Below the pieces are notes generated by a model that was given only the letters and a program-made list of their open reading frames with translations, made no database searches and had not been told where the DNA came from. 64,000 bases of DNA from Octopus sinensis (Eukaryota): contig NC_043011.1 of the NCBI RefSeq assembly GCF_006345805.1, forward strand, positions 23,200,464 to 23,264,463. Reading direction: 5' to 3'. This document shows, piece by piece, positions 1 through 57,056 of the stretch; position 1 is the stretch's first letter; each line of letters starts with the position of its first letter. A program made the position numbers and the translations under genes.

Positions 1-720
1 GTCTTGAAATATGGGGGTGATAAAATGTTTGAACTCTTAAATATATTAATTTGTCACTGTTGGAGAACTAAGAAAGTGCCTCAAGACTGGATTGATGCCA
101 TTTTAGTCTCCTTGTATAAATTGGGGCCAAAGGATCTGTGTGGTAATTTTTGTGGGATTTTGCTTTTGTTTGTGGTTGGAAAGGTACTTGCCCGCATTTT
201 GTTAGAACGCTTAAATACCTTCATAGTTCCAAATATAATGTCTGAGTCTCAGGGTGGTTTTTGTTCCTCCAGGGGCACAGCTGAATGTATCTTTATTATC
301 AGACAATTACAAGAAAAGTGCATTGAACAGAATCTTGCTCTATGCCATTTGCTTTGTTGATTTGAACAAAGTATTCAATACTGTTAATCGAAATGCTCTG
401 TAGTTAATTCTAAGAAAATAGGTTGCCTAGAAAAATTTGTAAACATGATCAGGGCTTTGCATCAAGATATGAAAACTAGAGTTAATTTTGGTGGTAGGTT
501 CTCTGAATATTTTGCTGTGGAAAATGGAGTAAAGCAACCACCCTCTTTGCAATATACTTTGCTGTTGTGTTGGCACATGCTTTTCAAAACTCTGAGGAGG
601 GTATTTACATAAAATATCGAACAACAGGGAATCTTTTTAATCTGACCAAACTGAAATTCAAGAGTTGCAGAAAAGGTGACAGATGTGTGACGAAAGATTT
701 CCAGACAATGGACATAAGAT
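1..720 (+). mobile_element. Decayed RTE-clade (BovB-like) LINE reverse transcriptase fragment
   Basis: VPQDWIDAILVSLYK...GKVLARILLERL...ESQGGF...RQLQEKCIEQN, then after a frameshift FVDLNKVFNTVNR...GVKQ. Contains stops. Confidence 0.85.
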
Positions 721-2760: not shown

Positions 2761-3249
2761 ATTGTATGTAGTGTTCATGCATTTTTGGTAGCATTTTCTG
2801 ATGAGCTGTACACCTGAGCATTGTATACAATGAATTATTATTATAAAAAGTATCCAGTACACTTTGTAAAGTGTTGGCATTAGGAATGACATGCAGCTGT
2901 AGAAGTTATGCCAAAATAGGTTGCAAGCTCCTGTTAAACAATCCAAATTATGTCAGAATGGAAAGCCCATGTTGAGTAATGGTGATGACATGAAATTTTG
3001 TGAGTAATATGTTAGAAATATATCAGATTGATTAAAAGAATTGATTAAAATAATTTTTTAATTTCTCTTTCAGAGGTTTGTGGCATGGTCCTGGAGCATT
3101 TCGCAAGATTTTCAACTTTTGGCGTAATTAATCTTTTCTGGAAATCTGGGAATCTCTCTTTTTTGTAGAGATGTTGCGATTTTGTTGTGTGAAACCTTTA
3201 TCAACCAAGTGATGTAGCTATACAAGTCAAACATATTCACACGTCTATA

Positions 3250-4152
3250 CATATGTATATGTATATATGTTAGTTATATATTAAGATATATATATATATA
3301 TATATACAAATATACATATATGTATATAAAAATATATACAAATATATATATATATATATATATAGATATATACAAATAATATATATATATATATACAAAT
3401 ATATATATATATAGATATATACAAATATATATATATAGATATATACAATATATATATATATAGATATATACAAATATATTATATATATATATAGATATAT
3501 ACAATATATATATATATATATATATAGATATATACAAATTTATATATATAGGTATATATATATATATATATATATATAGGTATATATTATATATATATAT
3601 ATACAAATTTATATATAGGTATATATATATATATATAGATATATACAAATTTATATATATAGGTATATATATATATATATATAGATATATACAAATTTAT
3701 ATATAGGTATATACAAATTTATATATAGGTATATACAAATTATATATATAGATATATACAAATATATATATATATAATATATATATACAAATTTATATAT
3801 ATAGGTATATACAAATTTATATATATAGGTATATACAAATTTATATATATAGATATATAAAATTTATATATATATATAGATATATATACAAATATATATA
3901 TACACATACATATATATATATATATATAAATAAATATATATAATATATATATATATACAAATATATATATATACAAATATATATATACAAATATATATAT
4001 ATACAAATATATATACAAATATATATATATATATATATAATACACAAATATATATATATATCCACAAATATATATATACACAAATATATATATATATCCA
4101 CAAATATATATATACACAAATATATATATATATCCACAATATATATATATAC

Positions 4153-4212
<60 letters not shown>

Positions 4213-4295
4213 AATATAATATATATATGTAAGTATACGTGTGTGTGTGTACATATAGTTGTATGTATGTACACACGCACACACATATATACATA

Positions 4296-4334
<39 letters not shown>

Positions 4335-4335
4335 G
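3250..4335. repeat. About 1.1-kb compound (TA)n microsatellite with CAA/GAT/GGT interruptions
   Basis: Visible directly. It generates spurious YI-rich ORFs. Confidence 0.95.
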
Positions 4336-4881
4336 AACACACACAAATCTCATATTTTCATACCTTTCACTTAGAATGTGAATGTTGGACTTCTTTTTCC
4401 AAACAACTATTTTCGTCTCATATTCTCTTATTTTTGTATTCACTGAAAGGTTTAGAAGATTGTTAAAGCATCCAACAAAACTCTTTGGGGTATTTTGTTT
4501 TGCCATTTTCTTTCATCAGTTTGAATCCTGCTTCTTGCCAAGTAGATTTTTACCTTTCCATACTTAGAGCGGAAAGATCAATGAAGTAGGTGTCTACCAA
4601 CTAAGCACTGAGGTTGATTTAATCAATTGTCCCCTTCCCTCCACAAAATTTGTGGCTTTGTACAAATGCTAGAAACCTTAATAATCCTTTATACAGTAGG
4701 TTCAAGGCCTGAAATTTTGCGGGAGTGGATAATTGATTTCATCAACCCCTGTGCCTAATTGGTGCTCGTTTCATTGACTCCTACAAGTTTGAAGGCAAAA
4801 TCAAACTTGACAGAATTTGACTCAGAATGTAAAGAGGGATACTAAGCACTGTGTCCAATGTGCATCGCCTTCAAGAAACCG

Positions 4882-5547: not shown

Positions 5548-5745
5548 TTTTATCTCTTTTACTTGTTTCAGTCATTTGACTGCGGCCATGCTGGAGCACC
5601 GCCTTCAGTCGAGCAAATTGACCCCAGGACCCACTCCTTGTAAGCCCAGTACTTATTCTATCGGTCTCTTTTGCCGAACCGCTAAGTGACGGGGACGTAA
5701 ACACACCAGCATCGGTTGTCAAGCAATGCTAGGGAGACAGACACA

Positions 5746-5785
<40 letters not shown>

Positions 5786-5957
5786 TATATATACATATAT
5801 ACGACAGGCTTCTTTCAGCTTCTGTCTACCAAATCCACTCACAAGGCATTGGTCGGCCCGGGGCTATAGCAGAAGACACTTGCCCAAGATGCCATGCAGT
5901 GGGACTGAACCCGGAACCATATGGTTGGTTAGCAAGCTACTTACCACACAGCCACTC
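5548..5957 (-). mobile_element. tRNA-headed SINE, family A
   Basis: Reverse complement of the recurrent GGAGTGGCTGTGTGGTAAGTAGCTTG...GGGTTCAGTCCC...(TA/TG)n...GACTGAAACAAGTAAAAGAG unit. Confidence 0.85.
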
Positions 5958-7000: not shown

Positions 7001-7811
7001 AGAAAGATATATTGTATACCATCATTATATTTTGCTTATTTTCTCCTAAATAGTTGTCCTACCTCCCCTGTAAAGATAACAGGTCTTACCCTTTTGTGAG
7101 ACCCCTAAAAACCAAGAACTTTTCAGCATCCCATCATATACTCTTACTCTTTTTTACTTGTTTCAGTCATGTGACTGTGGTCATGCTGGAGCATCGCCTT
7201 TAGTCGACCAAATCGATCCCAGGACTTATTCTTTGTAAGCCTAGCCAGGCTCATGGGCCCAGTTTCCCGGTTTCTATGGCGTATGTGTTCCCCAGCTGGA
7301 CGGGACGCCAGTCCATCGCAGCGTTACTCATTTTTGCCAGCTGAGTGGACTGGAGCAATGTGAAATGAAGTGTTTTGCTCAAGAACACAATGCGTTGTCT
7401 GGTCCAGGAATCAAAACCACAATCTTATGATCATGATGCTGACACCCTAACCACTAAGTCACGCACCCCCACAGTGATGGACAAAGTACAATTAAAATAC
7501 TAAGTACTTTAATAAAGAAACAGACAAAAGAAAAGAAAATGGTCAAGTTGACTAAAAATTACCTTTCTATCTTAAAGGTCAGATTATAAGGAAGAAAGTT
7601 CAAAACAGACTGAAGAATAAAGAATAAAATTAAGAATTTGAAGATAAAAGGATAATGTGGTGAAGACTGACCATTACAGTACTTATCAACTGTTTCCTTG
7701 TCTCTTTTAAGCATGTAAATTACCATCCATCTCTTATGACAAAACAACTGGCCCAACTGACTCAAAAGTGCCTCTATTTAAAACTGATTTACGACCAGCT
7801 ATTTTTTATGT

Positions 7812-8215
7812 AGCTGTGTGGTAAGTAGCTTGCTTACCAACCACATGGTTCCGGGTTCAGTCCCACTGCTTGGTACCTTGGGCAAGTGTCTTCTACTATA
7901 GCCTCAGGCTGACCAAAGCCTTGTGAGTGGATTTGGTAGACGGAAACTGAAAGAAGCCCATCGTATATATGTATATATATATATGTATGTGTGTGTTTGT
8001 GTGTCTGTGTTTGTCCCTCCAACATCGCTTGACAACCGATGCTGGTGTGTTTACGTCTCCATAACTTAGCGGTTCGGCAAAAGAGACTGATAGAATAAGT
8101 ACTAGGCCTACAGAGAATAAGTCCTGGGGTCGATTTGCTCGACTAAAGGCAGTGCTCCAGCATTGCCGCAGTCAAATGACTGAAACAAGTAAAAGATAGG
8201 GAGTAAAGAGTAAGA
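7812..8215 (+). mobile_element. SINE family A
   Basis: Near full-length unit with internal (TA)/(TG) tract and AAAAGAG tail. Confidence 0.85.
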
Positions 8216-15393: not shown

Positions 15394-15800
15394 AGGCACA
15401 GGAGTGGAGCAGCTGTGTGGTAAGTAGCTTGCTTACCAACCACATGGTTCCAGTTTCATTCCCACTGCGTGACACTTTGGGCAAGTGTCTTCTACTATAG
15501 CCTCGGGCTGACCAAAGCCTTGTGAGTGGATTTGGTAGATAGAAACTGAAAGAAGCCTGTCGTATATATGTATATATATATATGTATATGTTTGTGTTTG
15601 TCCTCCCAACATCGCTTGACAACCGATGCTGGTGTGTTTACGTCCCTGTAACTTAGTGGTTCGGCAAAAAGAGACCGATAGAATAAGTATTAGGCTTACA
15701 AAGAATAAGTCCTGGAGTCGATTTGCTCGACTAAAAGGCAGTGCTCCAGCAAGGCTGCAGTCAAATGACTGAAACAAGTAAAATAGTAATAGAGTAAAGA
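15394..15800 (+). mobile_element. SINE family A
   Basis: Full unit with head, internal TA tract and tail. Confidence 0.85.
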
Positions 15801-16429: not shown

Positions 16430-17138
16430 TATATTATCAACCCTCAAAGGATGAAAGACAAAGTGACTGGAATAAAAACAACCAAACACATACTTGATTT
16501 TAAAATATGTATATATATATATATAAATCTTTATTTCATATTAATTATTATTTACACTCAATTTTTTTTTAAATAGGAATCAGAAAAATATATTTTTTCA
16601 GATTTTTTGTTTTTGTACTAGGATGAATTTGAAAGTGAAAGATGGGTCGTAATTGTTATACATTTACATATAAAGATCTGTGTGGGAAAAAAAAAATGTT
16701 TTTGAAAGGAAAAAAATGATGGAAACAACAGAAAAAAAATCCTACAACATACAATAATGACTCATTTACAAATGTTGTGCTGATGATGTGTAAGCAAGGA
16801 AGACAATTTTCCTATCTCGTGTTATTGGGATTGATAAAATTAGAGAAATTAAAAATAAAGCAGACACCTTGTGACATTATACATAATATAATAGCTATAG
16901 TAGTAGTAGTAGTAGTAATAATAATGGTTTCAAATTTTGTCACAAGGGCAACAATTTTGGGGGAGTGGATAAGTTGATTGTATTGACCCCCAGTACATAA
17001 CTAGTACTTAATTTATTGAACTCGAAAGGATGAAAGGCAAAGTCGACTTTGGCAGAATTTGAACTCAGAACATAGTGATGGGCGAAATACTGCTAAGCAT
17101 TTTGTCCAGCATGCTAACAATTCTGCCAGCTCACAGCC

Positions 17139-17190
<52 letters not shown>

Positions 17191-17770
17191 TGATGATGAT
17201 GACAATGATAATAATAATTGTTTCTACTATAGGTATAAGGCCTGAAAGGCCTTATACCTATAGTAGAAACTCCAACATCGCTTGACAACCGATGCTGGTG
17301 TGTTTACATCCCCGTAACTCAGCGGTTCAGCAAAAGAGACTGATAGAATAAGTACTAGGCTTATAAAGAATTAGTCCTGGGGTCGATTTGCTCGACTGAA
17401 GGCAGTGCTCCAGCATGGCCACAGTCACATGACTGAAACAAGTAAAAGAGTAAAGAGTATCATAATCATCATCATTATAAAAGATATTAATATGTTAAAT
17501 TGACTCCCGATTCCTTGCTGAAAACATTTATAACCATTGAAGCGGATTGCTATTAGCAATTGTACTTTTGAACAGATGTAATATTTTGTTATATTGCAGG
17601 AAAGAATTTCTGTTGATCCTTAATAGAATATATAAAATGAATTAGTCTGGAGTGTTTTCCATTCAAGGAAACTTAACAGTTGATGTTTATATTTACAAAA
17701 GTCTATTACAAAACAGTAACAATACATAGGATCATATATAGACGGGTATACACATGTGCGTGCACGTACA

Positions 17771-20219: not shown

Positions 20220-20557
20220 TTAAATATTTTTACATCCAGGTGAACAGTGACTCGCAGGACAATATCCCATCCTACAATTATTAATACACCATGTAGGTAT
20301 TCCTGGAACTCTTCTCCAGACACCAACAGCCTGACATTTCCGTGTTTTAATTGTGGTTCTTCTTGTTGGTGCTTGTGTTGGTGTTGTTGTTGCTGCTTCT
20401 GTTGTTGTTGTTGCTGTCTTTGCTGTTGCACTAAACTTCGAGCTGTACCAGCTATCAGTTTCAGCTTTTGTAGGTTCATCTGCTTCTAGACTGGTAGTCG
20501 TACCAAGGCTGCTTGTCAGAATTCGAGTCCATTTGCCTAGTGTTGTCAGGGATGCAT
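20220..20557 (-). CDS. AA15-type LPMO, coding exon 4 (Thr-rich linker and C-terminal 6-Cys module, stop)
   Basis: Acceptor CATCAG|AT at 20558 is phase-1 compatible. Encodes DASLTTLGK...TTTPTQAPTRRTTIKTRKCQAVGVWRRVPGIPTWCINNCRMGYCPASHCSPGCKNI*. Total CDS is 189+418+240+338=1185 nt (394 aa). Confidence 0.82.
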
Positions 20558-23820: not shown

Positions 23821-24142
23821 TATTATACTACAGATTATATATATATGTGTGTGTGTGTGTGTTTGTCCCCCAACATCACTTGACAACCGATATTGGTGTG
23901 TTTACGTCTCCGTAACTTAGCGGTTCGGCATAAGTGACCGATATAATAAGTATTAGGCTTACAAAGTCCTGGGATCGATTTGCTCGACTAAAGGCGGTGC
24001 TCGAGCATGGCCACAGTCAAATGACTTGAAACCAGTAAAAGAATAAAAGAATATGCACCCATTTATCCAAACATACATATATGTGTGTGAGCCTGTTTGA
24101 GTGTGTGTGTGTATGTGTGTATGCATGTAAGAATCTGTATGT

Positions 24143-24575: not shown

Positions 24576-24815
24576 CTGTTGCTCTCCATTTTGTTCCTTC
24601 AGTTGTCGGCGAATTGCTGAGTAGTTCTGTGCTCTGTTCTGTGCTCTGTTCGGTATTTGGTGACTTTGTGGTAGACTGTGTGGATGCAGGTGGCGTTGAC
24701 GTCGTGCTACCGTTCGATTTGGGGTTGATGATAACATCAGAGCAAGCTTTAAATGTTTCTTGTAGCCCACATCCAATGCAAGCCGTTCCGTTTGGAAACC
24801 GACCCCAGCTATTAC
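24576..24815 (-). CDS. AA15-type LPMO, coding exon 3 (end of catalytic domain and start of S/T linker)
   Basis: Acceptor TCCAG|GT at 24816 completes Gly. Encodes GNSWGRFPNGTACIGCGLQETFKACSDV (AA15 motif GNxWG...CG.QETF..C.D), then a Ser/Thr-rich tract. Donor CAG|GTTGGT at 24575. 240 nt, phase 1 to 1. Confidence 0.9.
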
Positions 24816-27800
24816 CTGGATTGGAAATAAAATAGGACACAGTGTAAATATTTTTTTATTTTCATGAAGGCATAAAGAGGAAATATCAGAAACCACGTCG
24901 AAGATCTATTTTGCAAAAAAGACAAAAAAAAAAACCCACAAAAAAAAAAAGAACAACTCCCTTCCCCACAGACGTCTATATTTCTTTGTAATGACCTGCT
25001 GTTGTTGTTGTTGTTAAGCAACAAGACAGGTAAGGGTGATTAGGTGATGGTCTAGGGCTTAGGGGCGGGACACCCCAGACCTTGGAAAAAAAAAGCACTT
25101 TGGTCGTCTTGTTGTAGTCGAGGGCTCTTCGTTGACGCCCGACACCACTGGGAGGTGGCCCTAGAAGTCGCTGGAAATGGAGATCTCCAGGTCCAAATTC
25201 TTAAACAGCGTAATGACCTGCTGGATGTATTGACTAAATCACCTTCAAATCACTCTCGGCTGGGTTTTAAATGACGAAAGGACACAAGATAATCTAATCT
25301 TACATTGTTTAAAGGACGGGTTGATCACGGCTTGCAGACATCTTTAGGCATGCATCTGCCCAGTCAGCGTTGACCTAGGGTAAAACCAACTAAAACTCAT
25401 GCACTAGTTCTTTTTTTACTGTTTTTATTACTTATTTATTAATTGGTAGACCATTTAACCAATTAACTAATTGATTGTTTGATTAATCTTTTGGGCAATC
25501 GATCAATCAGGTTTGTCCAAGTTTTTTCGCCGTCATTTAAGATCCTATTAATGACATGCCCTCTTTACTCTAAGTCTGCTTCAGGTCCGTCTAGACATTA
25601 AGGTGTAGCCTTGAAGAATTTAGTCGAACAAATCATTGACTCCAGTACTTAATTTTTAAGCCTGTCTCTTTTGCAGAACCGCTAATGTACGGGGACCTAA
25701 ACCAAACCGACAGCAGTTGTCAAAGATACGCATACACATGCACATATATGACGGGCTTCCACACAGTTTCTGTCTACCAAATTCACTTAAAAGGTATTGG
25801 TTCGCTGGCAGAAACGTTAGCACGCCGGGCGAAATAAGTACCAGTTACGCACTGGGGTCGATATAATCGACTTAATCCGTTTGTCTGTCCTTGTTTGTCT
25901 CATCTGTGTGTAGACCCTTGTGGGTAGTAAAGAAATAGGTATTGGTTCGCTTATAGCAAAATGCACAAGGTGCTGCGCAGCAAGATTGAACTTGGAACCG
26001 TGTGAATGCAAAGCGGGTTTCTTAACCACGCAACCATGACTGCTTCTGTGTTTCCACCTCAGCAATTTGAAACTTAGAAAGCACAGTTATGGCTCAGTTT
26101 TGATTAAGTAACTGGTATCAATATCTTTGTATCAATAACTTCACCAATGACCCTTGAGTCCTTTTTAGCAGAGCTCCTTCTTTTGCAAGCAATGGGTCCT
26201 GGTCACTGATCTGAAAATATTTTTCTCCTTTTTTCCCATCAACTACCAAGGCCCAGAAGGGAATTACTAGCGCTACCTTTCTTCCTCAAACTAAACCATT
26301 AAAAATAAAATCAGTGTCATGCATTTAGCGTTTTTATCTTGTTCTTGCAACCTCGGGTTCCCAGGTTCAATCTTATTGCAAGTGTTTTGATCAATTGTCG
26401 TTTTCTCTTGCTCCAGCTCGACCAATACCTTGTGAAAGTGAATGCGCCTGGTGTTGTTTGTGTATTCGGCTCATGATCATAAGGTTGTGAGCTCGCTTCC
26501 AGGCAGTGCGATGTGCCCTTGTGTCAGATACTTTATTTCGCGTTGTTCCAGTCCTCTCAGATGGCAAATATGGGTAGCACCTGTAATTCAGTGGGCCAGC
26601 CTTGTCATGTGAATCTCCATGAGAACTACGTTAAGGGCAAGCGTGTCTGTGGAGTGTTCAACCACTTGTTAGTTAATTTCACGAGCAGGCTGTTCCGTTG
26701 ATTGAATCGACTGGGAACACTCTTCGTCGTAACCGACGGAGTGCCCAGTCACCTTCTGAGTGAAAATTGGGTTGATGGGAACTGCATAGAAGTCTGTCGG
26801 ATCAATTGTACCTGTACAATGTGTTACACTGATTCTTCTTCAGAATTACTTTAAAGATACATATGTCTACGAATAGTCATCCACGTTAATTTGACGACTA
26901 GGTAAAATTGAATACTCACGGTCGAACTACGAAGATCTATGCATCCATTCATATCTCGCTCAGGATTCATTATAGTTTGTATTGTATCTCTTGCTTAGTT
27001 ACAAACCGAGGACAAAAAGCTATCTTAGCACCAATTTATATCATAAAAATATATTTCGTTTCAAATTTTGGCACAAAGCCAGTAACTTCGAGGGAGGGGC
27101 TAGTCTATTACATCGATGCCAGTACTCAACTGGCACTTATTTTATCTACCATGAAGTGATGAAAGGCAAAGTCGACCTCGGCGGAATTTAAACTCAGTAC
27201 GTAAAGACGAACGAAATACTGCTGAGAATTATGCCCTGCGCGCTAACGAACTTGCCAATTCGCTGCTTTACATCACTTTCATAGTTGATACCTGCAATAA
27301 CAGTAACATACAACTGACAAGTGTTTCATTAGCTTTCTGGTCTGTGCTTCAAGTTCCGTGCAATCTTAACAGAGCGATGAGTAGTATCTCAAAGATCGAA
27401 TGGATTAAGAGACAACGACACAACCACCACGAAACCTTTAACGCTGAAAGTACTTTTAGAACATGCCTTATTTATATAGCTTCCTTTAAGGAAAATAACA
27501 ATGTAAAACAAAACAAAACAACCTTTTTCAAAAACCTGATAAAATAGGGCTATGTTGATTTTTTAGATCATGGGTGTTTGTATCCCCTTCGTAAATGTAT
27601 ATAAGGACACAGGGAAAAATGTGTCAAAGCCATCAGGAGGCGTTCGATGCTTCCTAGGGCTATACAGCGGTGGTGTACTCCCCTACTGTCACGTTCGTGT
27701 TAGATTGACAGTATACAACCATTCTATCGCCCCACCACCGTACATGTCTCTACGAGAGATTTAGAAATTCAGTATTACTTATAATTAAAAACCATTTTAA

Positions 27801-27864: not shown

Positions 27865-28282
27865 CGGTTATGTACGTCCATTGGAATAAGCATTTGTTGC
27901 AGACCACACCACTTGGTAGTTTGAGGGAGATATTATTAAGCATAACTGGTGATGTGTGTGGGATGTAATATTTGGTGTCATTAGTTTCACCGATGGTTAA
28001 CAGATGTTTGTTCAAACACGATTGACTAACTTCAACAAAATCGCTTCCATTTGAATATTCAATATCACCAGCTTTAGGGTTATCGTAAGGGCAGATTCGA
28101 AATTCAAAATAACCTTTGTGATTAGCAGTTACTTGTACTGCAGCTGTAATTGTTGATCCTTCCTCATAATTTGCTGTTATGAATCCTTCATAATATTTTC
28201 CACCCCTTTCATGGTCCCGTGGATTTTGATCCCACGGGTCTCCACAGACGCCACATAATCCATTGTATTTGTGAATAAGCGC
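27865..28282 (-). CDS. AA15-type LPMO, coding exon 2 (catalytic core, second His)
   Basis: Acceptor TTTTTCCAG|GCG at 28283. Encodes ALIHKYNGLCGVCGDPW...VQVTANHKGYFEFRIC...CLFQWTYIT. Donor CCG|GTAAGT at 27864. 418 nt, phase 0 to 1. Confidence 0.95.
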
Positions 28283-28419
28283 CTGGAAAAAGAAAAAAAA
28301 AAACGAAACTGAAACCAAAAGCAAGAGAAGTACACAAATTGGAAATCTTTCTGCTTATATCATTGCCAAGGTTTTCCAAGACTATGGATACATGTAATCA
28401 AAGTTTTATGTCTTCTTTT

Positions 28420-28630
28420 CTACTCTAGGTACAAGGCCCGACATTTTTTGGGAGGGGATCTGTCGATTAGATCGATCTCAGTACGCAACTGATACTTAAT
28501 TTATCGAACTTGAAAGGATGGAAGGTAAAGTTGACCTCGGCAGAATTTGAACTCAGAACGTAAAAACAGACGAAATACCGCTAAGCATTTTGCCCGGCTT
28601 GCTAACGTTTCTGCCAGCTCACCGCCTTGA
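28420..28630 (-). mobile_element. SINE family C (one of more than 15 copies or fragments)
   Basis: Reverse complement of GGCGGTGAGCTGGCAGAAACGTTAGC...GAGTTCAAATTC..CGAGGTC.ACTTT.CCTT.CATCC. Other copies lie near 16930, 25800, 27060, 28720, 30662, 36345, 39300-39850, 48610, 49185 and 54480. Confidence 0.8.
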
Positions 28631-29204
28631 AAGTTTTATATATTATACTTACTTCTAACCAGCTATATTATATAATAAGATATCATATTAATGATTTCTG
28701 ATTATATTGGTTCCAAATATTGGCACAAGAACAGCAGTTTTAGAAGAGTGTCAAAGTCAATTAATCAACCCCAGTGCTCAACTGGTGTTTATTTTATCGA
28801 CTCCGAAAGGATGAAAAGCAAAGTCGACCCCGGAGCCATTTGAAATCAGAACGTAAAGTCGGAATAAATGCTGCTATTTTCCCGGCACGGAGACATTCTG
28901 CCAGGTCTCCCCGTTGGTTCGTATAGGCAGGTAGGTAGGTAGGTAGGTAGGTTTGTAGTTTGATAGGTAGATAGGTTAATAGAAAGGCTGGTAAATAGGT
29001 AGATTGGTAGGTATGCGGGTTGGATAAGAACGAGGTAAATATTTGGAATGTGTGGATGTCAAACAACGGATGCTCCACGGAGATCTGTCATCTTTTCGAA
29101 ATAGAAAAGCATGATTTGTCGTTAAATCATTTTACATGTCTATTTAAAGTACATGATGTTTTCATTTGGCCTTTCGGATATACATACATACAAATAAAAA
29201 TGCA

Positions 29205-29484
29205 TGTACACATACATACATACATACATACATACATACATACATACATACGCACGTATATACATTTGCATATATGTATACACACATAACACACACACAC
29301 ACACACACACACGCTCACACACGCACACAAACACACACACACACACACGCACACACACACACGCTCACACACACACACACACACACACGCTCACACACAC
29401 GCAACACACACACACAAACACACACACACACGCAACACATACACACACACGCACACATACACACACACACGCAACACATACACA

Positions 29485-29543
<59 letters not shown>

Positions 29544-29550
29544 CACACAA
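29205..29550. repeat. (TACA)n plus (CA)n microsatellite
   Basis: Visible directly. Confidence 0.95.
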
Positions 29551-29735
29551 AGGAAGTGCTACTATTTTTATAGATTACCCTTTCGGTTGCAGGAAGCAGG
29601 ACCAAAGACAACACCTGATGTCGAATTTAAGAATAAGTTTTAGAAACATCACGAACGTAAAGCCAAATATTTGAATGCCACCGTCACTAACGGACTCTAT
29701 GAACTCGCATATATTTAAACTGTGTCTTTACTGAA

Positions 29736-31513: not shown

Positions 31514-31661
31514 GCGCAGGAGTGGCTGTGTGGTAAGTAGCTTGCTTACCAACCACATGGTTCCGGGTTCAGTCCCACTGCGAAGCACCTTGGGCAAGTG
31601 TCTTCTGCTATAGCCTCGGGCCGACCAGTTTGGTAGACGGAAACTGAAAAGAAGCCCGTCG

Positions 31662-31704
<43 letters not shown>

Positions 31705-31921
31705 ATATGTTTGTGTGTCTGTGTTTGTCCCCCCACCATCGCTTGACAACCGATGCTGGTATGTTTACGTCCCCGTCACTTAGCGGTTCGGCAAAAAGAG
31801 ATCAATAGAATAAGTACTGGGCTTACAAAGAATAAGTCCCGGGGTCGATTTGCTCGACTAAAGGTGGTGCTCCAGCATGGCCGCAGTCAAATGACTGAAA
31901 CAAGTAAAAGAGTAAAAGAGA
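31514..31921 (+). mobile_element. SINE family A
   Basis: Full unit. Confidence 0.85.
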
Positions 31922-32634: not shown

Positions 32635-32823
32635 CTCTCTTCCACCGCAGTAACCTTCGTTGTCATTGTAATTGTTGTTTCTCACATTATAGCCAAAACG
32701 CCATAGTGAAGCTCTCGATGGGGGTCGCAGGAGACGAGCATGTCCTTCTACGTAGTACACGACGACGAGTACAAGTAATAAATGTAGTAGGGTATATGGT
32801 GACATATTCTTTGTGCGCGACAT
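32635..32823 (-). CDS. AA15-type LPMO, coding exon 1 (signal peptide plus N-terminal His1)
   Basis: MSRTKNMSPYTLLHLLLVLVVVYYVEG|HARLLRPPSRASLWRFG...NYNDNEGYCGGRE. A hydrophobic signal ending VEG is followed by His and the LPMO motif HxRLxxPPSRxSxWR. Donor GAG|GTAAGT at 32634. 189 nt, phase 0. Confidence 0.95.
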
Positions 32824-34446: not shown

Positions 34447-34669
34447 TGTGTGTGCGTGCGTGCGTGTGTGTTTGTCCCCCATCACCACTTGACAACCAGT
34501 GTTGGCGTGTTTACGTCTCCGTAACTTAGCGGTCGGTAAAAGAAACTGATAGAACGATATAATAAGTATAAGACTTAAAAATAAAAATAAAAGTACTAGG
34601 GTCAATTCATTCGGCTAAAGGTTCTTTATGTCTTCAGTCTAATAACTGAAAGAAGTAAATGATAATATA

Positions 34670-35420
<751 letters not shown>

Positions 35421-36156: not shown

Positions 36157-37329
36157 GGCCGTTCTACTTGCTAGAAATAGCAATCAAATGTCCCTTCATC
36201 CACTCGCTCTGGTGGTATAAAAACAGCTAATAAATTTTTTTTATCCAAGATGATGTGGTCCTGGATACACTAAGGGCAAAAAGGCTATAGCAGACTTCCA
36301 TTTAGGGCAGTCCTGAGCTAAACAACTACTGAATTAAAACTTGGTTTCAAAATTTGGCACAAGGCCAGCAGTTCTGAAGGAAGAGGTAAGTCGATTACAT
36401 CGACCCCAGTGCTCAGCTGGTGCTTATTCTGTCGACCCCGATAGGACGAAAGGCAAAGACTACCTCAGCGGAATTTGAACTCAGTACCTAAAGTCGGACG
36501 AAATGCCGCTAAGCATTTACCAGGTGTACTAACTATTCTGCCAGCTTACCGCCTTAATATTGAATTAAATATTACATTATAGTGCTTTGCTCTTTCTCCC
36601 TGTTTCCGAGTTGTACTTTCGAGCTTGATGAAATAATCAAGCTATACTGGGTATGAACCAATCACTCTACAAAAATACCGGATCTTTTCACCAAGTGAAA
36701 AGAACCAATGTGGGCAGTGTCTTCGTGTGTGTTTTTGCCCCTACCACCGCTTGACAAGACAACCGGCATTGGTGTGTTTACGTCCCCGTGCTTTAGCGGT
36801 TCGGCAAAATTGATCGATAGATGAACCCTCAGGCTAGGAGGGTTCATCCGAGTAATAGGGATCAAAGGGATCCATAGTTAAAAAATGATAGAGAAACACT
36901 GCTTTAAATAATGTTAAGCAATGATTTTACTTTAAAAATAACAAAAAAAAAAGAAGATAATTAATAAAATAAAAGGGAAAAAGCTATAACAATAATTTTA
37001 ACCGTCACAATGACTTCAATGATAATGTATTGACTCGCGATGAAATAAAATGGCAGACAATATATTTACGGTGATATCAATTTATGAAACATTGTCGAAA
37101 TTCAGTAAAACGAAACGATGAAGGGTTTAACTTTATGAGTTTTCTATTAGTGAAAAAGACCTCATCGTATTTGCCTAAATCGTGATAAGAACCATTTAAT
37201 AGAATAACAGTAATGAAATTCGGTTTTGTAATGTCATTGATTTAAATAAATGAATTTCTTTTGAACAACATCGGTTCTCTTTATCGCTCTATTTTTCTTT
37301 ATTCACGTGTGTGTGTGTGTATGTGCAAA

Positions 37330-38236: not shown

Positions 38237-40519
38237 CACATTCGCTAATACATACACATTTTTCTTTGTCTTTGTCCATGTGCTGTTTCTTCAAAATAAG
38301 GGATTGGCCCTTAAAGATTTGAGGATTTCTTTTGGAATGGGAAAGCGAAAGGATGAATCAGAACATTGCGAATGAATCATTCGAATTGAGTAATGTGGTG
38401 GAAAAGTGGAAGGAGGCGACACTAAATTCTGTGAAACATTTAGTCCGAGACTTCTATTATTTCTATGAAAACGTGTTATCATTATTACATCAACTGAATT
38501 GCAATTAAAAGTATTCTACGCATTGTCGGGAAAGGCGGAGCAACAATTTTGCACATGTAGCTAGAAGGGGCGGAGACAAAAAAATTAGACACGTGTAACC
38601 AGGTGAGCTAATTAAACATACGTAGCGAGAAGAAACACGTGTAATCAGAAGAGGTGGAGACAAAGCAGTCAGTTACGTGGTGGACCGTGTGACCAGTGTG
38701 AATTGGGTTGACGGAAGGTCGTAAATAGCATAGAAAGAAGCGAAAACAAAATACTAAAAATAAACAGAAAACAGATATTAGGAAAATAAATAAATAAATA
38801 AATAAATAAAAACCTGTTGTAAATTGGAATTTTTATCTATAGAAAACGGAAGTAGATAAATGTGTGTCTTATTTCGATTGTACAAAGATCAAATATGTTG
38901 GCATTATTGCTTACTGTATTGTTGTTGTTTATTTCACGAGCAGGCTATTCCGTTGATCAGATCAACTGGAACTCTAGCCAGTTGTTGTCGCTGTTGTATA
39001 AATAAACTGCATGACCGAATAGTTATGAAATTTGATTCTGCAATCATGATGTCTTAAGTTCGATTCCACTGGGGGGGGGGGGATGTTGGACAAGTGATTC
39101 TTTATTTATTCTTCTTTTTTTTTTAAATGTAGCATCGGGTCACTTGAAATTTTTAAAGGTTCAGTCTTGTCCCGTTGATTCCACCGGGGAAGAGTCATTT
39201 ACTCCTTACATGCTAATACAATTAACAAGATTCCATTGACTGACTGAATACTCATCACTGAAACCGACGGACACCAGTTTACTGACGCACTACAAAATAG
39301 TGATTTCAAACTTTGGCACAAGGCCAGCAATTCTAGGGAACGGGGTAAGTCGGTTACATCGATTCCAGTGCCCAACTGGTACTTATTTTATCGATTCTGC
39401 AAGGATGGAAGGCAAAGTCGACCGCTGCAGCATTTGAACTCAGAATATAAAGACGGACGAAATGTTGTTAAGCATTTTGTCCGGCGTGCTGATGTTTCAA
39501 CCAATTCGCTGTTTTGATACGAAATAATTCTTTCTGTTGCAGGCATAAGGCTAGAAATTTTGGAGGAGGTGTTTAGTCAATTATATAACCTCACTGTTCA
39601 ACTAGTATTCATTTTATCGACCCCAAAAGGATTAAAGGCAAAATCGACCTCGGTGGCATTTGAACTCGGAACGTAAAGTTGGTAGAAATGCTGCAAAGCA
39701 TTTTATTCAATATGCTTTTCTACTCTTTTGGAGGAAAGGGGGCAGTCGATTAAATCGACCCCAGTACGCAATTGGTACTTAATTTATCGACCCCAAAAAG
39801 ATGGAAGGCAAAGTCGACCTCGGCGGAATTTGAACCCAGAACGTAGTTATACATTGTAACTATATTCTGCAATCGTTACACATTCTGTGGTGAGAATATA
39901 TTCTATCAAATTAAAATACGATATATTTTTAGAATTTATAGATCTCCAACGAAATTAAAAGTAAAGTTGAGCCCATTTGGAATTTGAACTTAGGAACATT
40001 AGACACTCAGCTAAATATAGTAAAATATATAAATTACAATTTCGTACATTGACCTAATGTTGTTATTTAGCCTCAAATAAACCCTGATACTGCAAACCTA
40101 TCATCAAAGACATTCCAGCCTTCAGCAAACCGTCTTTTTAGGGATAATCTAGGATATTACATACAATGGGCGTGTGATTTAGGTAGTGGGATACTTTGAC
40201 TGCTATTTTTAGCGTGTCGAGCGACCAGGTAGAGGCTCTGTCATTGGTTCGATTGCGTGATGAGATTTTTTTACTCATATATGTAATATGTATATATATC
40301 ATCGGCAGAAGTTAGGGAGTAAGTAAAAAGCTGAGAGTTTCGTTATTGGCACTTATCAAACACGAATTTGTCCATTGTCACTCTGTAACTTCTGACGAAA
40401 TAACTCCTAAAATACAAAATTTTGTCAAAAACGTTAAGAATAAACCCATTCTACAAGATCGGAAGTTCGAAAGTGTTTAGTTAAAAACAATTAGTTAAAA
40501 AAAAATTAATTAATTAATC

Positions 40520-41180
40520 TGTACAGCTAATTGAATAGATCCGAAATGGATGAAAGGGAAAGTCGACCTCGGCGGAATTTGAACTCAGAACGTAAAGATA
40601 GACGAAATACCGCTTCTAAAATACAAAATTTTGTCAAAAACGTTAAGAATAAACCCTGTTCTATGTGACATATTCTACCAGTATCGGAAGTTTCAAAGAG
40701 TTTAGTTGAAAAACAATTAATTATATAATCTGTATATCAAAGTCGACCCCGGGGAAATTTGAGCTTAAAACTTAAAGAAAGACGAAATACCTATTTCTTT
40801 ACTACCCACAAGGGGCTAAACAAGGAAAGACAGACGGATCAAGTAGATTATATCGACCCCAGTGCGTCACTGGTACTTATTTAATCGACCCCGAAAGCAT
40901 GAAAGGCAAAGTCGACCTCGGCGGAATTTGAACTCAGAACGTAGCGGTAGACGAAATACCTATTTCTTTACTTCCCACAAGGGGCTAAACACAGAGGGGA
41001 CAAACAAAGACAGACAAACGAATTAAGTCGATTACATCGACCCCAGTGCGTAACTGGTAGTTATTTAATCGACCCCGAAAGAATGAAAGGCAAAGTCGAC
41101 CTCGGCGGAATTTGAACTCAGAACGTAACGGCAGTCGAAATACCGCAAAGCATTTCGCCCGGCGTGCTAACGTTTCTGCT
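40520..41180 (-). mobile_element. Multimeric SINE family C
   Basis: GTCGACC core at 40562, 40742, 40911 and 41095. Confidence 0.8.
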
Positions 41181-41747
41181 AGGGTTTATTCTTATTGCTA
41201 GGGCGTTACACCCCAATGCCTTACTGACATGAAATTTTGTAACATTTCACCTCATAACTCTTTTACTACTAATTTTTGTTCAATGTGACTAACGATTCTG
41301 AATTCCGCATGCATTTCTCTAACATTTAAGCTCAAGAAAAGTATACTTTTATTTTAAAATTAAAAAAAAATTACGTTAATTGAAGGTGAATAGGTGCCTT
41401 ACTGCCCGCTTTTAGAACTGACATATTTTGATGTAACTTTTTTTTCTACTGAACCAAATCTCAAACTATTTATGCCAAAGTGTAGATGAGGAAGTGTCCT
41501 CTTTAAAACTATTAACAGTTTGCAATTTAGTTGAGAACTGAATTAGTGGTGAAGCTTGGAAGCTGCTGCAATTGACGAAATGGTGGACTTAAGAATATAT
41601 TCAACCACTACCGTGGTTGAATGATTCACTGTTGCATGACTCGAGTTTCACGAAACTTCTATCATTAGGTTAAAACTGTCTTCTCTTAGTATCTCGAATT
41701 GTTTATATACATTAATGCAGATATTTTTTATTATCTATGGTTATCAT

Positions 41748-42150
41748 AGGCGCAGGAGTGGCTGTGTGGTAAGTAGCTTGCTTACCAACCACATGGTTCC
41801 GGGTTCAGTCCCACTACGTGACACCTTGGGCAAGTGTCTTCTACTATAGCCTCGGGGCGACCAAAGCCTTGTGAGTGGATTTGGTAAACGGAAACTAAAA
41901 GAAGCTTGTCGTATATTGTATATGTGTGTGTGTGTGTTTGTGTGTCTGTGTTTGTCCCCCCAACATCGCTTGACAACCGATGCTGGTGTGTTTATGTCTC
42001 CATTACTTAGCGGTTCGGCAAAAGAGACCGATATAATAAGTACTAGGCTTACAAATAATAAGTCCTGGGGTCGATTTGGTCGACTAGAGGTGGTGCTCCA
42101 GCATGGCCGCAGTCAAATGACTGAAACAAGCAAAAGGGTAAAAGAGAGCA
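41748..42150 (+). mobile_element. SINE family A
   Basis: Full unit. Confidence 0.85.
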
Positions 42151-44685: not shown

Positions 44686-45180
<495 letters not shown>

Positions 45181-46429
45181 TTTTCTACAAAACTGCAGAA
45201 TCATGATTCTTTTTTTTTTCTACTAAAAGAATGTACATTTGAAAGGATTATCCAAAATGGAAAATGACGAATCAAAAAATTCTTCACTGAAAATCTTGAA
45301 GGAGACATTGAGTAACGTAGTCCTAGATACACTATGGTTGAATAAAACATCGGGTGTTCGCAGTTGGAACGCTGCTGATCATAGATTGGAACGCTGTTGA
45401 TCGTAGATTAGAACGCTGATGATCGTAGGTTGATAAGCTTTGCCTGTGGCAAAACACCACCGCAACCACAACCACAACTAAGATCAACTGCATGCTGGTC
45501 ATACAACATAGTTTAGTAGACATTTCTGAAACTTGAGACTTTTGAGAAATGAAAACAATAGCTTCAGTGCAAGCAGCGTTAAGTCAACCGGAAAATAACC
45601 AAGTTGATTCGAATGATCAAAGCCTTTAGGGCTCTTTGTAGTTTCTTGAGTCGCGACTCTAAACCAGGAGAGGTTAATATGTCTGCCGTCGGATCGACGA
45701 GGACCGTCTAACCATCTTCAAGGAATGATTGATGAATTGCGCAGTAACTTTGTTGAAAGTGAAGAAGGACTGCGCACCGTCAACCTCGCTTTCCCCTCCG
45801 TGACTAACTTCAATCCAATGGCAAGATCAAGCCAAGATGACTGGGGATGGAGTCGGATGCTGTGAATGATCAAGACATCTGACTTGTCTCACCTTATTCT
45901 CGGCCCTCCACAATGCGTTGCAGCCTTCCTTGTTGAAGCCGCCTTCCTCGTTGAAGCATGAAGCTTTCTTCCGCAGATTCCACCGGATCACATACTGTTA
46001 TGGGAGAATCCTGAACACCCACGCGTGACTGAAGGGTGACTAACCGATTACAATAAATAAGAACTTAGGGAACTGTCAAGGGAGTAGTTGATAGTGTTTG
46101 TTCGACCGTGATCGACGTGTGTTGGTTTAATAGTCGGTATTTGAACAGTGAATACTTACGTTCGAGTAGTACGGAGAGCGTTCTGTTTTAACATATATTT
46201 CTGCGATAGGTTATTTTTAGATAACCAAAGCCAACTATTAATTTGTGTGATACCGTTTTACACCAGACGTGAATACCCACGTCATAACACATACACACTT
46301 AGATAAGCCCCAATATGCCAATTAACCCGCTTATGGAGACCCGAGAATAATAGTGGCTAAGTGGTGGTTCCACACACCTCAAAACCGTGGGTATGATTGT
46401 AAACAGCATTCGATAAAGACGTCCTAGTT

Positions 46430-55901: not shown

Positions 55902-57056
55902 CGGGGTGCGTTCAAAAAGTAACCGATTTTATTTTTTCCTCGCCGAAACTAATACCTATTTCTTTACTACCCACAAGGGGCTAAACACAGGGAGGACAAA
56001 CAAACGGATTAAGTCGATTATATCGACCCCAGTGCACAACTGGTACTTAATTTATCGACCCCGAAAGGATGAAGGGCAAAGTCGACCTCGGCGGAATTTG
56101 AATTCAGAACGTAACGGCAGACGAAATACGGCTACGCATTTCGCCCGGCGTGCTAACGTTTCTGTCAGCTCGCCAAAACTGATACTGCGAGAGCAAAATC
56201 CTTTAAGTGAGAGGTGACACCACCCTACCTGCGTATGCATGAAAATTTTCGCGCCGGTAGGCCGTAGCTGTTCTAGGGTGCTACGCCTAGTGTACAGGCA
56301 TGTAGTGCGCACTCGTCGGATTTTCGTTTCCACGCTAGATGACTGAACAGATGGAACGGAGATATTGCATCGAGTTTTGTCAAAAGCTTAGTGATACTCA
56401 AACTTAGACCGTCCAGAAGATTCAGCAGGCTTTTAACGATGATGTCATGGGTAATACTCAGATCAAGAAGTGATACAACTGCTTCAAACATGGCCGCGCT
56501 TCAGTGGAGAGCGAAGCACACTCAGGCAGGCTATCCACAAGCCGAAACGAGGAGGTGATTGAGACGGTTCGGCGGTTAGTTATTGAAGACCGTCGTGTAA
56601 CAATCCAGGAAATTGATCATGAAGTAGGAATAAGTACAGAATCAGTGCATTCCATTTTAATGGAGGATTTGTGCATGAGGAGAGTATTGGCAAAATTCGT
56701 CCCGAAGATGCTGGTGGAACAGCAGAAGCAACTCCACATGGAAATCGCTCAGGACATGCTGGACTGTACAAACCACGACCCAAAGTTCATGAAGGCCATC
56801 CTTACTGGTGATGAAAGATGGGTTTATGATCTCTATTCGATGCGTTCGGTCACTTTACGTGAAGACGAAAATCCGACGAGCGCACACTACGCATCTGTAC
56901 TTTAAGCGTAACAACCGGAAACTGACGCGGCCTACCGACACGAACATTTTCACACATGCGCAGAAAAGGTGCCGCCAGCTCTCACCCAAAGGATTTTGCC
57001 GTCGCGGCATTAACTTTAGCGAGAAAAATAATCGGATACTTTTTGAACGCACCTCG
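55902..57056 (+). mobile_element. Mariner-like element, internally deleted, with a nested SINE-C (about 55950-56173)
   Basis: TA TSDs at 55900-55901 and 57057-57058. TIRs CGGGGTGCGTTCAAAAAGTAACCG and reverse-complement CGAGGTGCGTTCAAAAAGTATCCG. Confidence 0.92.
56351..56830 (+). pseudogene. Mariner transposase pseudogene (N-terminal half)
   Basis: MERRYCIEFCQKL...*...RLVIEDRRVTIQEI...AKFVPKML (WVPHEL-like)...ILTGDERWVY (first catalytic Asp). Two in-frame stops, then truncated. Confidence 0.88.

What the first reader, a model, noticed from the sequence alone, without database searches (positions are those of the whole stretch)
20220..20336. Unassigned C-terminal six-cysteine module on the LPMO
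Seen: after about 120 residues of Ser/Thr-rich linker the protein ends in CQAVGVWRRVPGIPTWCINNCRMGYCPASHCSPGCKNI, with 6 Cys, 2 Trp and 1 Tyr in 38 aa. Knowledge: LPMOs often carry a linker-tethered carbohydrate-binding module, and this Cys spacing does not fit the peritrophin/CBM14 pattern. Inference: it is a small disulfide-bonded, aromatic-faced binding module, possibly an undescribed chitin-binding family. I recall similar C..G.W....WC..NC..G.CP...C tails on other invertebrate carbohydrate-active proteins but cannot confirm this.
Basis: partly seen in the sequence, partly recalled or inferred. Interest (0 to 1): 0.7.

Follow-up and report, generated by a model that had tools for sequence, protein, structure and literature searches.

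The report
Six-cysteine tail module on octopus LPMO
The last 38 residues of an Octopus sinensis chitin-oxidising enzyme (an AA15 LPMO) form a real, folded six-cysteine mini-domain from a widespread family that no database names. The family sits on chitin-active enzymes, so it probably binds chitin, but nobody has tested that.

Summary
Minus-strand codons 20336-20223 encode CQAVGVWRRVPGIPTWCINNCRMGYCPASHCSPGCKNI, followed by the stop at 20222-20220. This ends a 4-exon, 394-aa AA15 LPMO that is identical to RefSeq LOC115219724 of Octopus sinensis. A 124-aa Ser/Thr-rich, cysteine-free linker precedes it.

The tail is not a one-off:
- 70 of 120 LPMO homologues from molluscs, annelids, a brachiopod, chelicerates and crustaceans carry the same module.
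- An exhaustive HMMER search found 141 representative proteins. They include GH18 chitinase fragments, tandem arrays of up to 21 copies, and a haptophyte protein.
- Six cysteines are invariant, and Trp, Asn, Gly and Pro positions are conserved.
- AlphaFold2 gives pLDDT of about 90 for the module and below 50 for the linker.

Pfam, PDB sequence search and Foldseek give no assignment. The spacing does not fit CBM14.

The module is not entirely undescribed. Insect group I LPMO15-1 papers (2022, 2025) report two C-terminal six-cysteine repeats with nearly the same framework. A profile built without those repeats hits them far above cysteine-fixed shuffles.

The likeliest function is a chitin-targeting module. 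This rests on its partners and architecture, not on any assay. A weak lead points to a cysteine-stabilised alpha/beta scaffold.

The parts
20223..20336 (-). Six-cysteine C-terminal module, residues 357-394. Framework: C-x15-C-x3-C-x4-C-x4-C-x3-C.
   Evidence: Read from the sequence. Family profile built without it scores 53.5 bits against 2.5 +/- 4.6 for Cys-fixed shuffles. AF2 pLDDT is 88-94 in the full-length model, with helices at 361-365, 369-378 and 389-393.
20220..20222 (-). TAA stop codon of the LPMO gene.
20337..20557 (-). Exon 4, linker part: residues 283 (last two bases of its codon) to 356. Ser/Thr-rich and cysteine-free.
   Evidence: AG acceptor at 20559-20558. Composition. pLDDT is below 50 over residues 250-351.
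24576..24726 (-). Exon 3, linker part: residues 233 to 283 (first base of its codon).
   Evidence: GT donor at 24575-24574..
24727..24815 (-). Exon 3, end of the AA15 catalytic domain: residues 203 (last two bases of its codon) to 232, including GCGLQETFKACSDV.
27865..28282 (-). Exon 2, core of the AA15 catalytic domain. It includes CGVCGD and the second histidine-brace residue (His118 in TANH).
32635..32823 (-). Exon 1: start codon, 27-residue signal peptide, and His28, which becomes the N-terminal histidine of the mature LPMO.

Best explanation
The 38-residue tail is an independently folding mini-domain locked by three disulfides. It hangs on a disordered, probably O-glycosylated, Ser/Thr-rich tether of about 120 residues behind the copper-dependent AA15 catalytic domain of a secreted octopus LPMO.

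It belongs to an old, unnamed six-cysteine module family. The consensus is C-x15-C-x3-C-x4/6-C-x4-C-x1/3-C, with an aromatic residue seven positions from Cys1, Trp before Cys2, Asn before Cys3, Gly-aromatic before Cys4 and Pro after Cys4. The two C-terminal repeats of insect LPMO15-1 belong to the same family.

The most likely job is that of a non-catalytic chitin-binding or targeting module. It would hold the LPMO on chitin, for example prey cuticle or the animal's own chitinous linings, so that oxidative chain cleavage happens on the substrate. It would use the conserved Trp/Tyr/His/Asn side chains that the disulfide core does not need.

Shown here: the module exists, is conserved, is predicted to fold, and keeps company with chitin-active enzymes. 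Inferred: chitin binding, the binding residues, and a C1-C4/C2-C5/C3-C6 disulfide pattern taken from the cysteine-stabilised alpha/beta-like framework.
For: 1. Host enzyme. Residues 28-230 match Pfam LPMO_10 at E 1.1e-15. The domain aligns end to end with TdAA15A (PDB 5MSZ) at E 2.6e-41, with both brace histidines aligned. The model matches 5MSZ with TM 0.92 and rmsd 2.0.
2. Conservation. In 383 non-redundant module copies the six Cys are at 100%. Trp before Cys2 is 91%, the aromatic at column 13 is 87%, Asn before Cys3 is 74%, Gly at column 30 is 71%, and Pro after Cys4 is 89%. The octopus tail carries the consensus residue at each of these positions.
3. Distribution. 70 of the 120 best LPMO homologues carry the module, and in 64 it is the C-terminus. 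They come from named molluscs, annelids, Lingula, spiders, ticks, mites, a barnacle, a shrimp and copepods.
4. Partners.
   - Among 132 module-bearing representatives, 49 have LPMO remnants upstream and 11 have GH18 chitinase remnants upstream. The rest are tandem arrays with Pro/Ser/Thr linkers or tiny secreted two-module proteins.
   - In the chitinases the module occupies the post-linker position. From established knowledge, that is where animal chitinases usually carry CBM14.
   - None of the 127 scanned proteins has CBM14. The one LPMO homologue with CBM14 (P0118) lacks the module.
5. Fold. For the module alone, pLDDT is 80.8. In the full-length model it is 88-94, next to a linker below 50.
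6. Same family as the insect repeats. A profile built only from x4-loop modules scores the Tribolium, Locusta and Ostrinia LPMO15-1 repeats at 35-40 bits (repeat 1) and 20-22 bits (repeat 2). Cys-fixed shuffles score about 0 +/- 4 bits, and none of 500 reaches the real value.
7. Full-length OfLPMO15-1, which includes its two repeats, was purified on beta-chitin beads and is chitin-specific (PMC9156745).
8. Precedent. A plant cysteine-stabilised alpha/beta defensin binds chitin and beta-glucan (PMC7389181).
Against: - No binding experiment exists for this module in any species.
- AA15 catalytic domains bind chitin on their own, so the chitin-bead purification of OfLPMO15-1 does not isolate the module's contribution.
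- Trp before Cys2 and the Gly and Pro positions could be purely structural.
- Surface exposure and coplanarity of the aromatic residues could not be checked, because no coordinates were available.
- 72 of the 132 module-bearing representatives show no recognisable chitin-active domain. Many of these are fragments.
- The haptophyte and other protist copies sit in proteins of unknown function.
- Foldseek found no structural neighbour.
- The only profile hits to solved structures are weak, E 0.005-0.8, and rest largely on cysteine spacing.
Confidence: 0.55

Rival explanations
1. The module is a protein- or matrix-anchoring domain, not a carbohydrate binder. It would dock the LPMO and chitinases onto a partner protein of the cuticle, peritrophic-like lining or mucus, or mediate oligomerisation. 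The tandem-array proteins would then be cross-linkers.
For: - Many module-bearing proteins are pure tandem arrays with mucin-like linkers and no enzyme domain.
- Small disulfide-rich scaffolds of this cysteine type are usually protein binders; the nearest profile hits are engineered protein-binding miniproteins.
- Net charge varies widely between copies, from -11 to +11, as expected for diverse partners.
Against: - The only recurrent enzyme partners are chitin-active: AA15 and GH18.
- The module is mutually exclusive with CBM14 and occupies the post-linker position where animal chitinases usually carry CBM14.
- The conserved non-cysteine positions are aromatic residues and Asn, which is typical of sugar-binding sites.
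Confidence: 0.2
2. The tail is a redox-sensitive, conditionally disordered or metal-binding regulatory segment of the LPMO. Its cysteines and His386 would sense redox state or bind copper to modulate catalysis.
For: - A bioinformatic survey classed many AA15 C-terminal extensions as Cys-enriched, 'redox-sensitive conditionally disordered' regions (PMC8615602).
- A His precedes Cys5 in 44% of copies.
- Inter-domain copper coordination has been described for some bacterial multidomain LPMOs (titles listed).
Against: - Six invariant Cys at fixed spacing in secreted proteins, together with high AF2 confidence, point to structural disulfides in a folded domain.
- The His is not invariant.
- The module also occurs on GH18 hydrolases and in enzyme-free arrays, where regulating a copper enzyme makes no sense.
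Confidence: 0.08
3. The module is a defensin-like antimicrobial or antifungal peptide domain. It might be released by cleavage at the basic residues just before Cys1 (TRK-C in octopus) and would act alongside chitin degradation.
For: - The family consensus has the C...CxxxC...C...CxC framework of cysteine-stabilised alpha/beta peptides, with weak profile hits to that class.
- The octopus copy is basic.
- Several homologues have Lys/Arg runs before Cys1.
- Tiny secreted one- and two-module proteins exist.
Against: - Charge is not conserved; the mean net charge is +0.4 with sd 2.8.
- Basic residues before Cys1 are not a family feature; the preceding columns show 8-10% Lys.
- The octopus copy has C-x3-C, not CxC, at the end.
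- Foldseek found no match to defensins.
- The long glycosylatable linker suggests a tether, not a propeptide.
Confidence: 0.07
4. Artefact: a chance cysteine-rich stretch, or a wrongly joined terminal exon that is not part of the LPMO.
For: No transcript reads could be inspected here. The linker and tail lie on a separate exon, 4 kb downstream of exon 3.
Against: - The RefSeq model is identical.
- Canonical splice sites and phase are present.
- The same LPMO-linker-module order is found in dozens of species, including transcriptome-derived proteins.
- Similarity lies far above Cys-fixed shuffles.
Confidence: 0.02

Closest known systems
C-terminal six-cysteine repeats of insect group I LPMO15-1 (Tribolium, Locusta, Ostrinia, Monochamus; PMC9156745, PMC12955341). 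Unnamed, function untested.
   Same: - They sit behind an AA15 catalytic domain in a secreted protein.
- There are six Cys with C-x15-C-x3-...-C-x4-C spacing.
- They share the WC..NC and CP motifs.
- Profile similarity lies well beyond the cysteines.
   Different: - Insects have two contiguous copies about 40 residues after the catalytic domain. They have an x6-9 loop between Cys3 and Cys4 and end in CxC.
- The octopus has one copy on a 124-aa Ser/Thr linker, an x4 loop, and a C-x3-C ending followed by KNI. That subtype is seen here in oysters, abalone, Gigantopelta and a copepod, among others.
CBM14 / peritrophin-A chitin-binding domain (Pfam PF01607)
   Same: - Six cysteines.
- Extracellular.
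- Appended by Pro/Ser/Thr linkers to animal GH18 chitinases and some AA15 LPMOs, or strung in tandem arrays.
   Different: - There is no Pfam hit.
- CBM14 is about 60-70 aa with different, longer cysteine spacing and a beta-rich fold. The module here is about 35 aa and is predicted to be mostly helical.
- The two never co-occur in the proteins scanned.
X473 and X474 modules of Saprolegniales AA15, GH18 and GH19 enzymes (PMC8393829)
   Same: - Short (under 40 aa).
- Even number of absolutely conserved cysteines (six in X473).
- C-terminal to AA15 LPMOs and chitinases.
- Proposed, but not shown, to bind chitin.
   Different: They are reported as restricted to Saprolegniales by BlastP. No X473 sequence or HMM was available here, so a relationship is neither supported nor excluded.
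Cysteine-stabilised alpha/beta (cis-defensin / short scorpion-toxin-like) scaffold
   Same: - The family consensus has C...CxxxC...C...CxC.
- The CxxxC pair lies on the predicted main helix.
- The only profile hits in the PDB and Pfam are to this class.
- Some plant defensins bind chitin.
   Different: - The hits are weak (E 0.005-0.8) and driven by cysteines.
- There is no Foldseek match.
- No beta-hairpin is predicted, and the Cys3-Cys4 loop is very short.
- The octopus copy ends C-x3-C in a helical turn rather than CxC in a strand.
Small aromatic-faced CBMs: CBM1 (fungal cellulose-binding) and CBM18 (hevein)
   Same: - About 35-40 residues.
- Held together by disulfides.
- Linker-tethered to CAZymes including LPMOs.
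- A few conserved aromatic residues.
   Different: Different cysteine number and spacing, and no sequence or profile match.

Membership tests
Six-cysteine repeat of arthropod group I LPMO15-1 (literature motif) | Lies C-terminal to an AA15 catalytic domain of a secreted protein. | tested here: met
   Signal peptide and His28. LPMO_10 covers residues 28-230. 5MSZ matches at E 2.6e-41. The module is at residues 357-394.
Six-cysteine repeat of arthropod group I LPMO15-1 (literature motif) | Cysteine framework C-X15-C-X3-C-X6-9-C-X4-C-X1-C, as published. | tested here: not met
   The octopus has C-X15-C-X3-C-X4-C-X4-C-X3-C. The first, second and fourth spacings agree; the third and fifth differ. 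Across the wider family x4 / x1 is the commonest form (269 of 348 copies); the octopus x4 / x3 form accounts for 28 of 348.
Six-cysteine repeat of arthropod group I LPMO15-1 (literature motif) | Two tandem copies. | tested here: not met
   One copy only. The linker has no cysteine.
Six-cysteine repeat of arthropod group I LPMO15-1 (literature motif) | Sequence similarity beyond the cysteines (homology). | tested here: met
   A profile built from x4-type modules only scores the insect repeats at 35-40 and 20-22 bits, and the octopus tail at 53.5 bits. Cys-fixed shuffles score about 0-2.5 +/- 4 bits, and none of 500 reaches the real score.
CBM14 / peritrophin-A | Match to Pfam PF01607 and the CBM14 cysteine spacing. 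| tested here: not met
   No Pfam hit for the tail at E<=10, nor for 67 module copies. The spacing does not fit the longer CBM14 inter-cysteine gaps (established knowledge). The insect papers also state that the repeats are unrelated to CBM14.
Cysteine-stabilised alpha/beta superfamily | A CxxxC pair on an alpha-helix. | tested here: met
   Cys373 and Cys377 lie in the predicted helix 369-378 (helix 20-29 of the 45-aa model).
Cysteine-stabilised alpha/beta superfamily | A CxC pair on a beta-strand, bonded to the CxxxC pair. | tested here: not met
   The octopus ends C-S-P-G-C, with a predicted helical turn at 389-393. The family consensus does have CxC (86%). Disulfide partners cannot be read without coordinates.
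Cysteine-stabilised alpha/beta superfamily | Significant structural or profile match to a known member. | tested here: inconclusive
   The profile against the PDB gives 8 hits, all of this scaffold class, but with E 0.0055-0.79. Pfam PF14866 hits 2 of 67 copies at E 0.024. Foldseek against the PDB gives no hit.
X473 module (Saprolegniales) | Sequence or HMM match to X473. | not tested
   The description matches: six Cys, under 40 aa, on AA15 and GH18 enzymes.
AA15 LPMO (host protein) | N-terminal His after signal-peptide cleavage, a second brace His, and the AA15 fold. | tested here: met
   His28 and His118 align with His1 and His91 of TdAA15A. Foldseek's top hit is 5MSZ, with TM 0.92 and rmsd 2.0.
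Carbohydrate-binding module (CAZy sense) | Experimentally shown carbohydrate binding by the isolated module. | not testable with these tools
   No experiment was found in the literature searched.

The most novel reading that the evidence does not exclude
This module is the animal-and-protist representative of a new, ancient carbohydrate-binding module family. It would be built on a cysteine-stabilised alpha/beta-like mini-scaffold that binds chitin. It would functionally replace CBM14 on AA15 LPMOs and GH18 chitinases across lophotrochozoans, chelicerates and crustaceans, and it would also form peritrophin-like tandem arrays. It might be related to the oomycete X473 module.
Probability: 0.3. 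Interest if true: 0.65.

Novelty: new variant of a known kind. Interest (0 to 1): 0.5.

Why it matters
AA15 LPMOs are essential for cuticle turnover in insects and are widespread in invertebrates, yet about half of them carry C-terminal regions of unknown function.

This work ties the octopus tail, the insect LPMO15-1 repeats, chitinase-borne copies and free tandem arrays into one conserved family. That gives a concrete, small (about 35 aa) and easily expressed candidate for a new chitin-binding module family.

If binding is confirmed, three things follow:
- It would explain how these enzymes are targeted.
- It would improve annotation of thousands of 'uncharacterized' invertebrate proteins.
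- It would offer a compact chitin tag.

If it does not bind chitin, the strict association with chitin-active enzymes would need another explanation.

Tried and rejected
Searches that found nothing:
- The word-indexed protein search found nothing with the 45-aa tail or with the 67-sequence module alignment. This is a sensitivity limit of that tool, not absence: the exhaustive HMMER search and the full-length search found the family.
- Pfam gave no hit on the tail, the exon, or 67 module copies.
- The single-sequence PDB search gave only a non-significant hit, E 4.3.
- Foldseek with the module model gave no match in the PDB or BFVD. This is expected for a 45-residue query and is not evidence of a new fold.

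False positives set aside:
- Five long representative hits (P0123, P0125, P0150, P0226, P0229) were not confirmed by the family HMM. The two with any Pfam matches (P0125, P0229) show only repetitive or unrelated ones. I treated all five as false positives.

Readings rejected:
- CBM14. The cysteine spacing differs, there is no PF01607 hit, and the two are mutually exclusive.
- A chance cysteine cluster. The shuffle control rules this out.
- A second hidden copy in the linker. The linker has no Cys, and the motif scan found one copy.

Limited returns:
- Name look-ups for representatives gave few organism names: Littorina, the copepod Acartia and the haptophyte Phaeocystis.
- ORFs elsewhere in the window that look like transposon remnants gave no Pfam hit.

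Full report
**What is there**

The window is repeat-rich, AT-rich animal DNA. On the minus strand, four exons (32823-32635, 28282-27865, 24815-24576, 20557-20220) join with canonical GT/AG sites and consistent phases. They give a 394-aa protein. tblastn of that protein places the four exons as read. The protein is 100% identical to NCBI 'uncharacterized protein LOC115219724 [Octopus sinensis]'.

- Residues 1-27 are a signal peptide.
- His28 starts an LPMO domain: Pfam LPMO_10 covers residues 28-230 at E 1.1e-15.
- The domain aligns end to end with the Thermobia AA15 structure 5MSZ at E 2.6e-41, with both brace histidines aligned.
- A full-length AlphaFold2 model matches 5MSZ with TM 0.92.
- Residues 233-356 are a 124-aa linker with 43.5% Ser+Thr and no cysteine. 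Its pLDDT is below 50.

The finding's span 20220-20336 is exactly the last 38 codons plus the stop. It reads CQAVGVWRRVPGIPTWCINNCRMGYCPASHCSPGCKNI, with 6 Cys, 2 Trp and 1 Tyr.

**Is it more than chance, and is it unique?**

The word-indexed search found nothing with the tail alone. The full-length search returned 120 LPMO homologues. A family HMM finds the same tail in 70 of them, and in 64 it is the very C-terminus. The named sources are:
- bivalves, gastropods and the octopus;
- annelids (Capitella, Ridgeia, Owenia);
- the brachiopod Lingula;
- spiders, ticks, mites and a pseudoscorpion;
- a barnacle, a shrimp and copepods.

An exhaustive phmmer search of 1.84 billion representatives with the 41-aa tail gave 141 hits at E<=1e-3, many with 2-21 copies. 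In 383 non-redundant copies:
- the six cysteines are invariant;
- Trp precedes Cys2 in 91%;
- column 13 is aromatic in 87%;
- Asn precedes Cys3 in 74%;
- Gly is at column 30 in 71%;
- Pro follows Cys4 in 89%.

The octopus tail has the consensus residue at all of these positions. A profile built without it scores it at 53.5 bits. 500 shuffles that keep the cysteines in place score 2.5 +/- 4.6 bits. The dominant spacing is C-x15-C-x3-C-x4-C-x4-C-x1-C. The octopus belongs to a minority subtype that ends C-x3-C, shared here with oysters, abalone, Gigantopelta and a copepod, among others.

**Company it keeps**

Pfam on 127 module-bearing representatives found only LPMO_10 (20 proteins) and GH18 (3 proteins) as recurrent partners, and no CBM14.

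Many entries are fragments, so I also used motifs. 49 have LPMO remnants upstream of the module. 11 have GH18 remnants upstream; one of these (P0129) also carries a GH18 active-site motif downstream of its three modules, so the modules may lie between two GH18 domains. In chitinases the module sits after a Pro/Ser/Thr linker. From established knowledge, that is where animal chitinases usually carry CBM14. The one LPMO homologue with CBM14 lacks the module.

The remaining proteins are tandem arrays with mucin-like linkers, up to 21 copies in P0121. There are also 100-170-aa secreted proteins made of two or three modules, for example from the copepod Acartia.

Four copies occur in a Phaeocystis cordata (haptophyte) protein, and others in marine-eukaryote transcript catalogues. 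The family is therefore not confined to animals.

**Is it a known domain?**

- Pfam gives nothing for the tail or for 67 copies.
- The single-sequence PDB search gives nothing significant.
- Foldseek with the module model finds nothing in the PDB or BFVD.

The literature, however, already notes the motif. [quoted passage not shown]

I took the Tribolium, Locusta and Ostrinia C-termini from that paper's supplement. A profile built only from x4-loop modules aligns both repeats over its full length, with all six cysteines in register and a two-residue insertion in the Cys3-Cys4 loop. The scores are 35-40 bits for repeat 1 and 20-22 bits for repeat 2. Cys-fixed shuffles score about 0 +/- 4 bits.

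So the octopus tail is a divergent, single-copy relative of a published but unnamed and functionally untested motif. No paper in the searched library dissects its function. A survey of LPMO C-terminal extensions would class such tails as 'unknown' or 'redox-sensitive conditionally disordered' regions (PMC8615602).

The oomycete X473 module has six conserved Cys, is under 40 aa, and occurs on AA15, GH18 and GH19 enzymes. It sounds similar, but no sequence was available to compare.

**Fold**

AlphaFold2 on the module with a 67-sequence alignment gives pLDDT 80.8. In the full-length model the module reaches 88-94. The predicted elements are:
- a short helix at 361-365;
- the main helix at 369-378, which carries Cys373 and Cys377;
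- single beta-bridges at Ala359 and Cys387;
- a C-terminal helical turn at 389-393.

The family framework C...CxxxC...C...CxC is that of cysteine-stabilised alpha/beta peptides. The only profile hits in the PDB are miniproteins and peptides of that scaffold class, at E 0.0055-0.79. Pfam PF14866 appears for 2 of 67 copies at E 0.024.

This is a lead, not a result. The hits depend on cysteines, no hairpin is predicted, and the octopus copy lacks the terminal CxC.

**Mechanism**

The best-supported reading (about 0.55) is a chitin-targeting module. A rigid, disulfide-locked knob presents conserved Trp/Tyr/His/Asn side chains. A long, flexible, probably O-glycosylated tether lets the AA15 domain sweep the chitin surface while staying attached.

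The support is the exclusive association with chitin-active enzymes, the CBM14-like architectural roles, and the conserved aromatic residues and Asn. Supporting context is that full-length OfLPMO15-1 binds beta-chitin beads and that a plant defensin of the related scaffold class binds chitin. Binding itself is untested.

The rivals are:
- a protein or matrix anchor (0.2);
- a redox or metal regulatory tail (0.08);
- a releasable defensin-like peptide (0.07);
- an artefact (0.02).

**Verdict**

The feature is real and conserved. It is correctly read as an unassigned disulfide module on an LPMO. It is not entirely undescribed, and chitin binding remains an inference. I rate it a new variant of a known kind, of moderate interest.

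Noticed in passing
window 16929-17142, 27058-27271, 28417-28630, 28723-28872, 36345-36558, 39304-39517, 40811-41195, 55968-56181; inverted copies 63217-63743: An interspersed repeat family of about 214 nt with at least 11 copies at 62-90% identity. It looks like a SINE. Three copies lie in introns of the LPMO gene (families D9, D10, D12, D14).
   Followed up: no
window 5549-5957, 7802-8196, 15407-15735, 17231-17459, 23867-23965, 31524-31862, 41756-42143, 44688-45192, 57267-57677: A second interspersed repeat family of about 200-400 nt, present in both orientations. It produces recurring pseudo-ORFs such as '...[35 protein letters not shown]...'. Two copies lie in LPMO introns.
   Followed up: no
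window 3225-4350, 29160-29570, 34630-35410: Long microsatellite and minisatellite blocks of (TA)n, (CA)n and TATC-type units. They create long spurious ORFs rich in Tyr-Ile, His-Thr or Cys-Val.
   Followed up: no
window 4-360 (+) and 56504-56905 (+): Two ORFs that by eye resemble a retroelement reverse-transcriptase fragment and a mariner-type transposase N-terminal fragment. Neither gave a Pfam hit at E<=0.01.
   Followed up: partly
P0149 (Phaeocystis cordata, EukProt), residues 519-939; also P0189, P0222, P0237, P0228, P0206: The six-cysteine module also occurs in a haptophyte and in unnamed marine-eukaryote transcripts. There it has shorter Cys1-Cys2 loops, sits in Pro/Ser/Ala-rich proteins, and has no recognised enzyme domain.
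   Followed up: partly
P0129 (619 aa; modules at 255-393; GH18 active-site motif DGLDLDWE at 551): A chitinase fragment with three modules that have GH18 sequence motifs on both sides, so the modules appear to lie between two GH18 domains. From established knowledge, this resembles the way CBM14 separates catalytic domains in multi-domain insect chitinases.
   Followed up: partly
window 20337-20345 (residues 354-356, T-R-K, just before Cys1); homologues P0002, P0006, P0039, P0052, P0078: Runs of Lys/Arg sit directly before Cys1 in the octopus and in several oyster and mite homologues (for example KKKC, KKKRC). They could be a processing site or just a charged linker end. This is not a family-wide feature.
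   Followed up: partly
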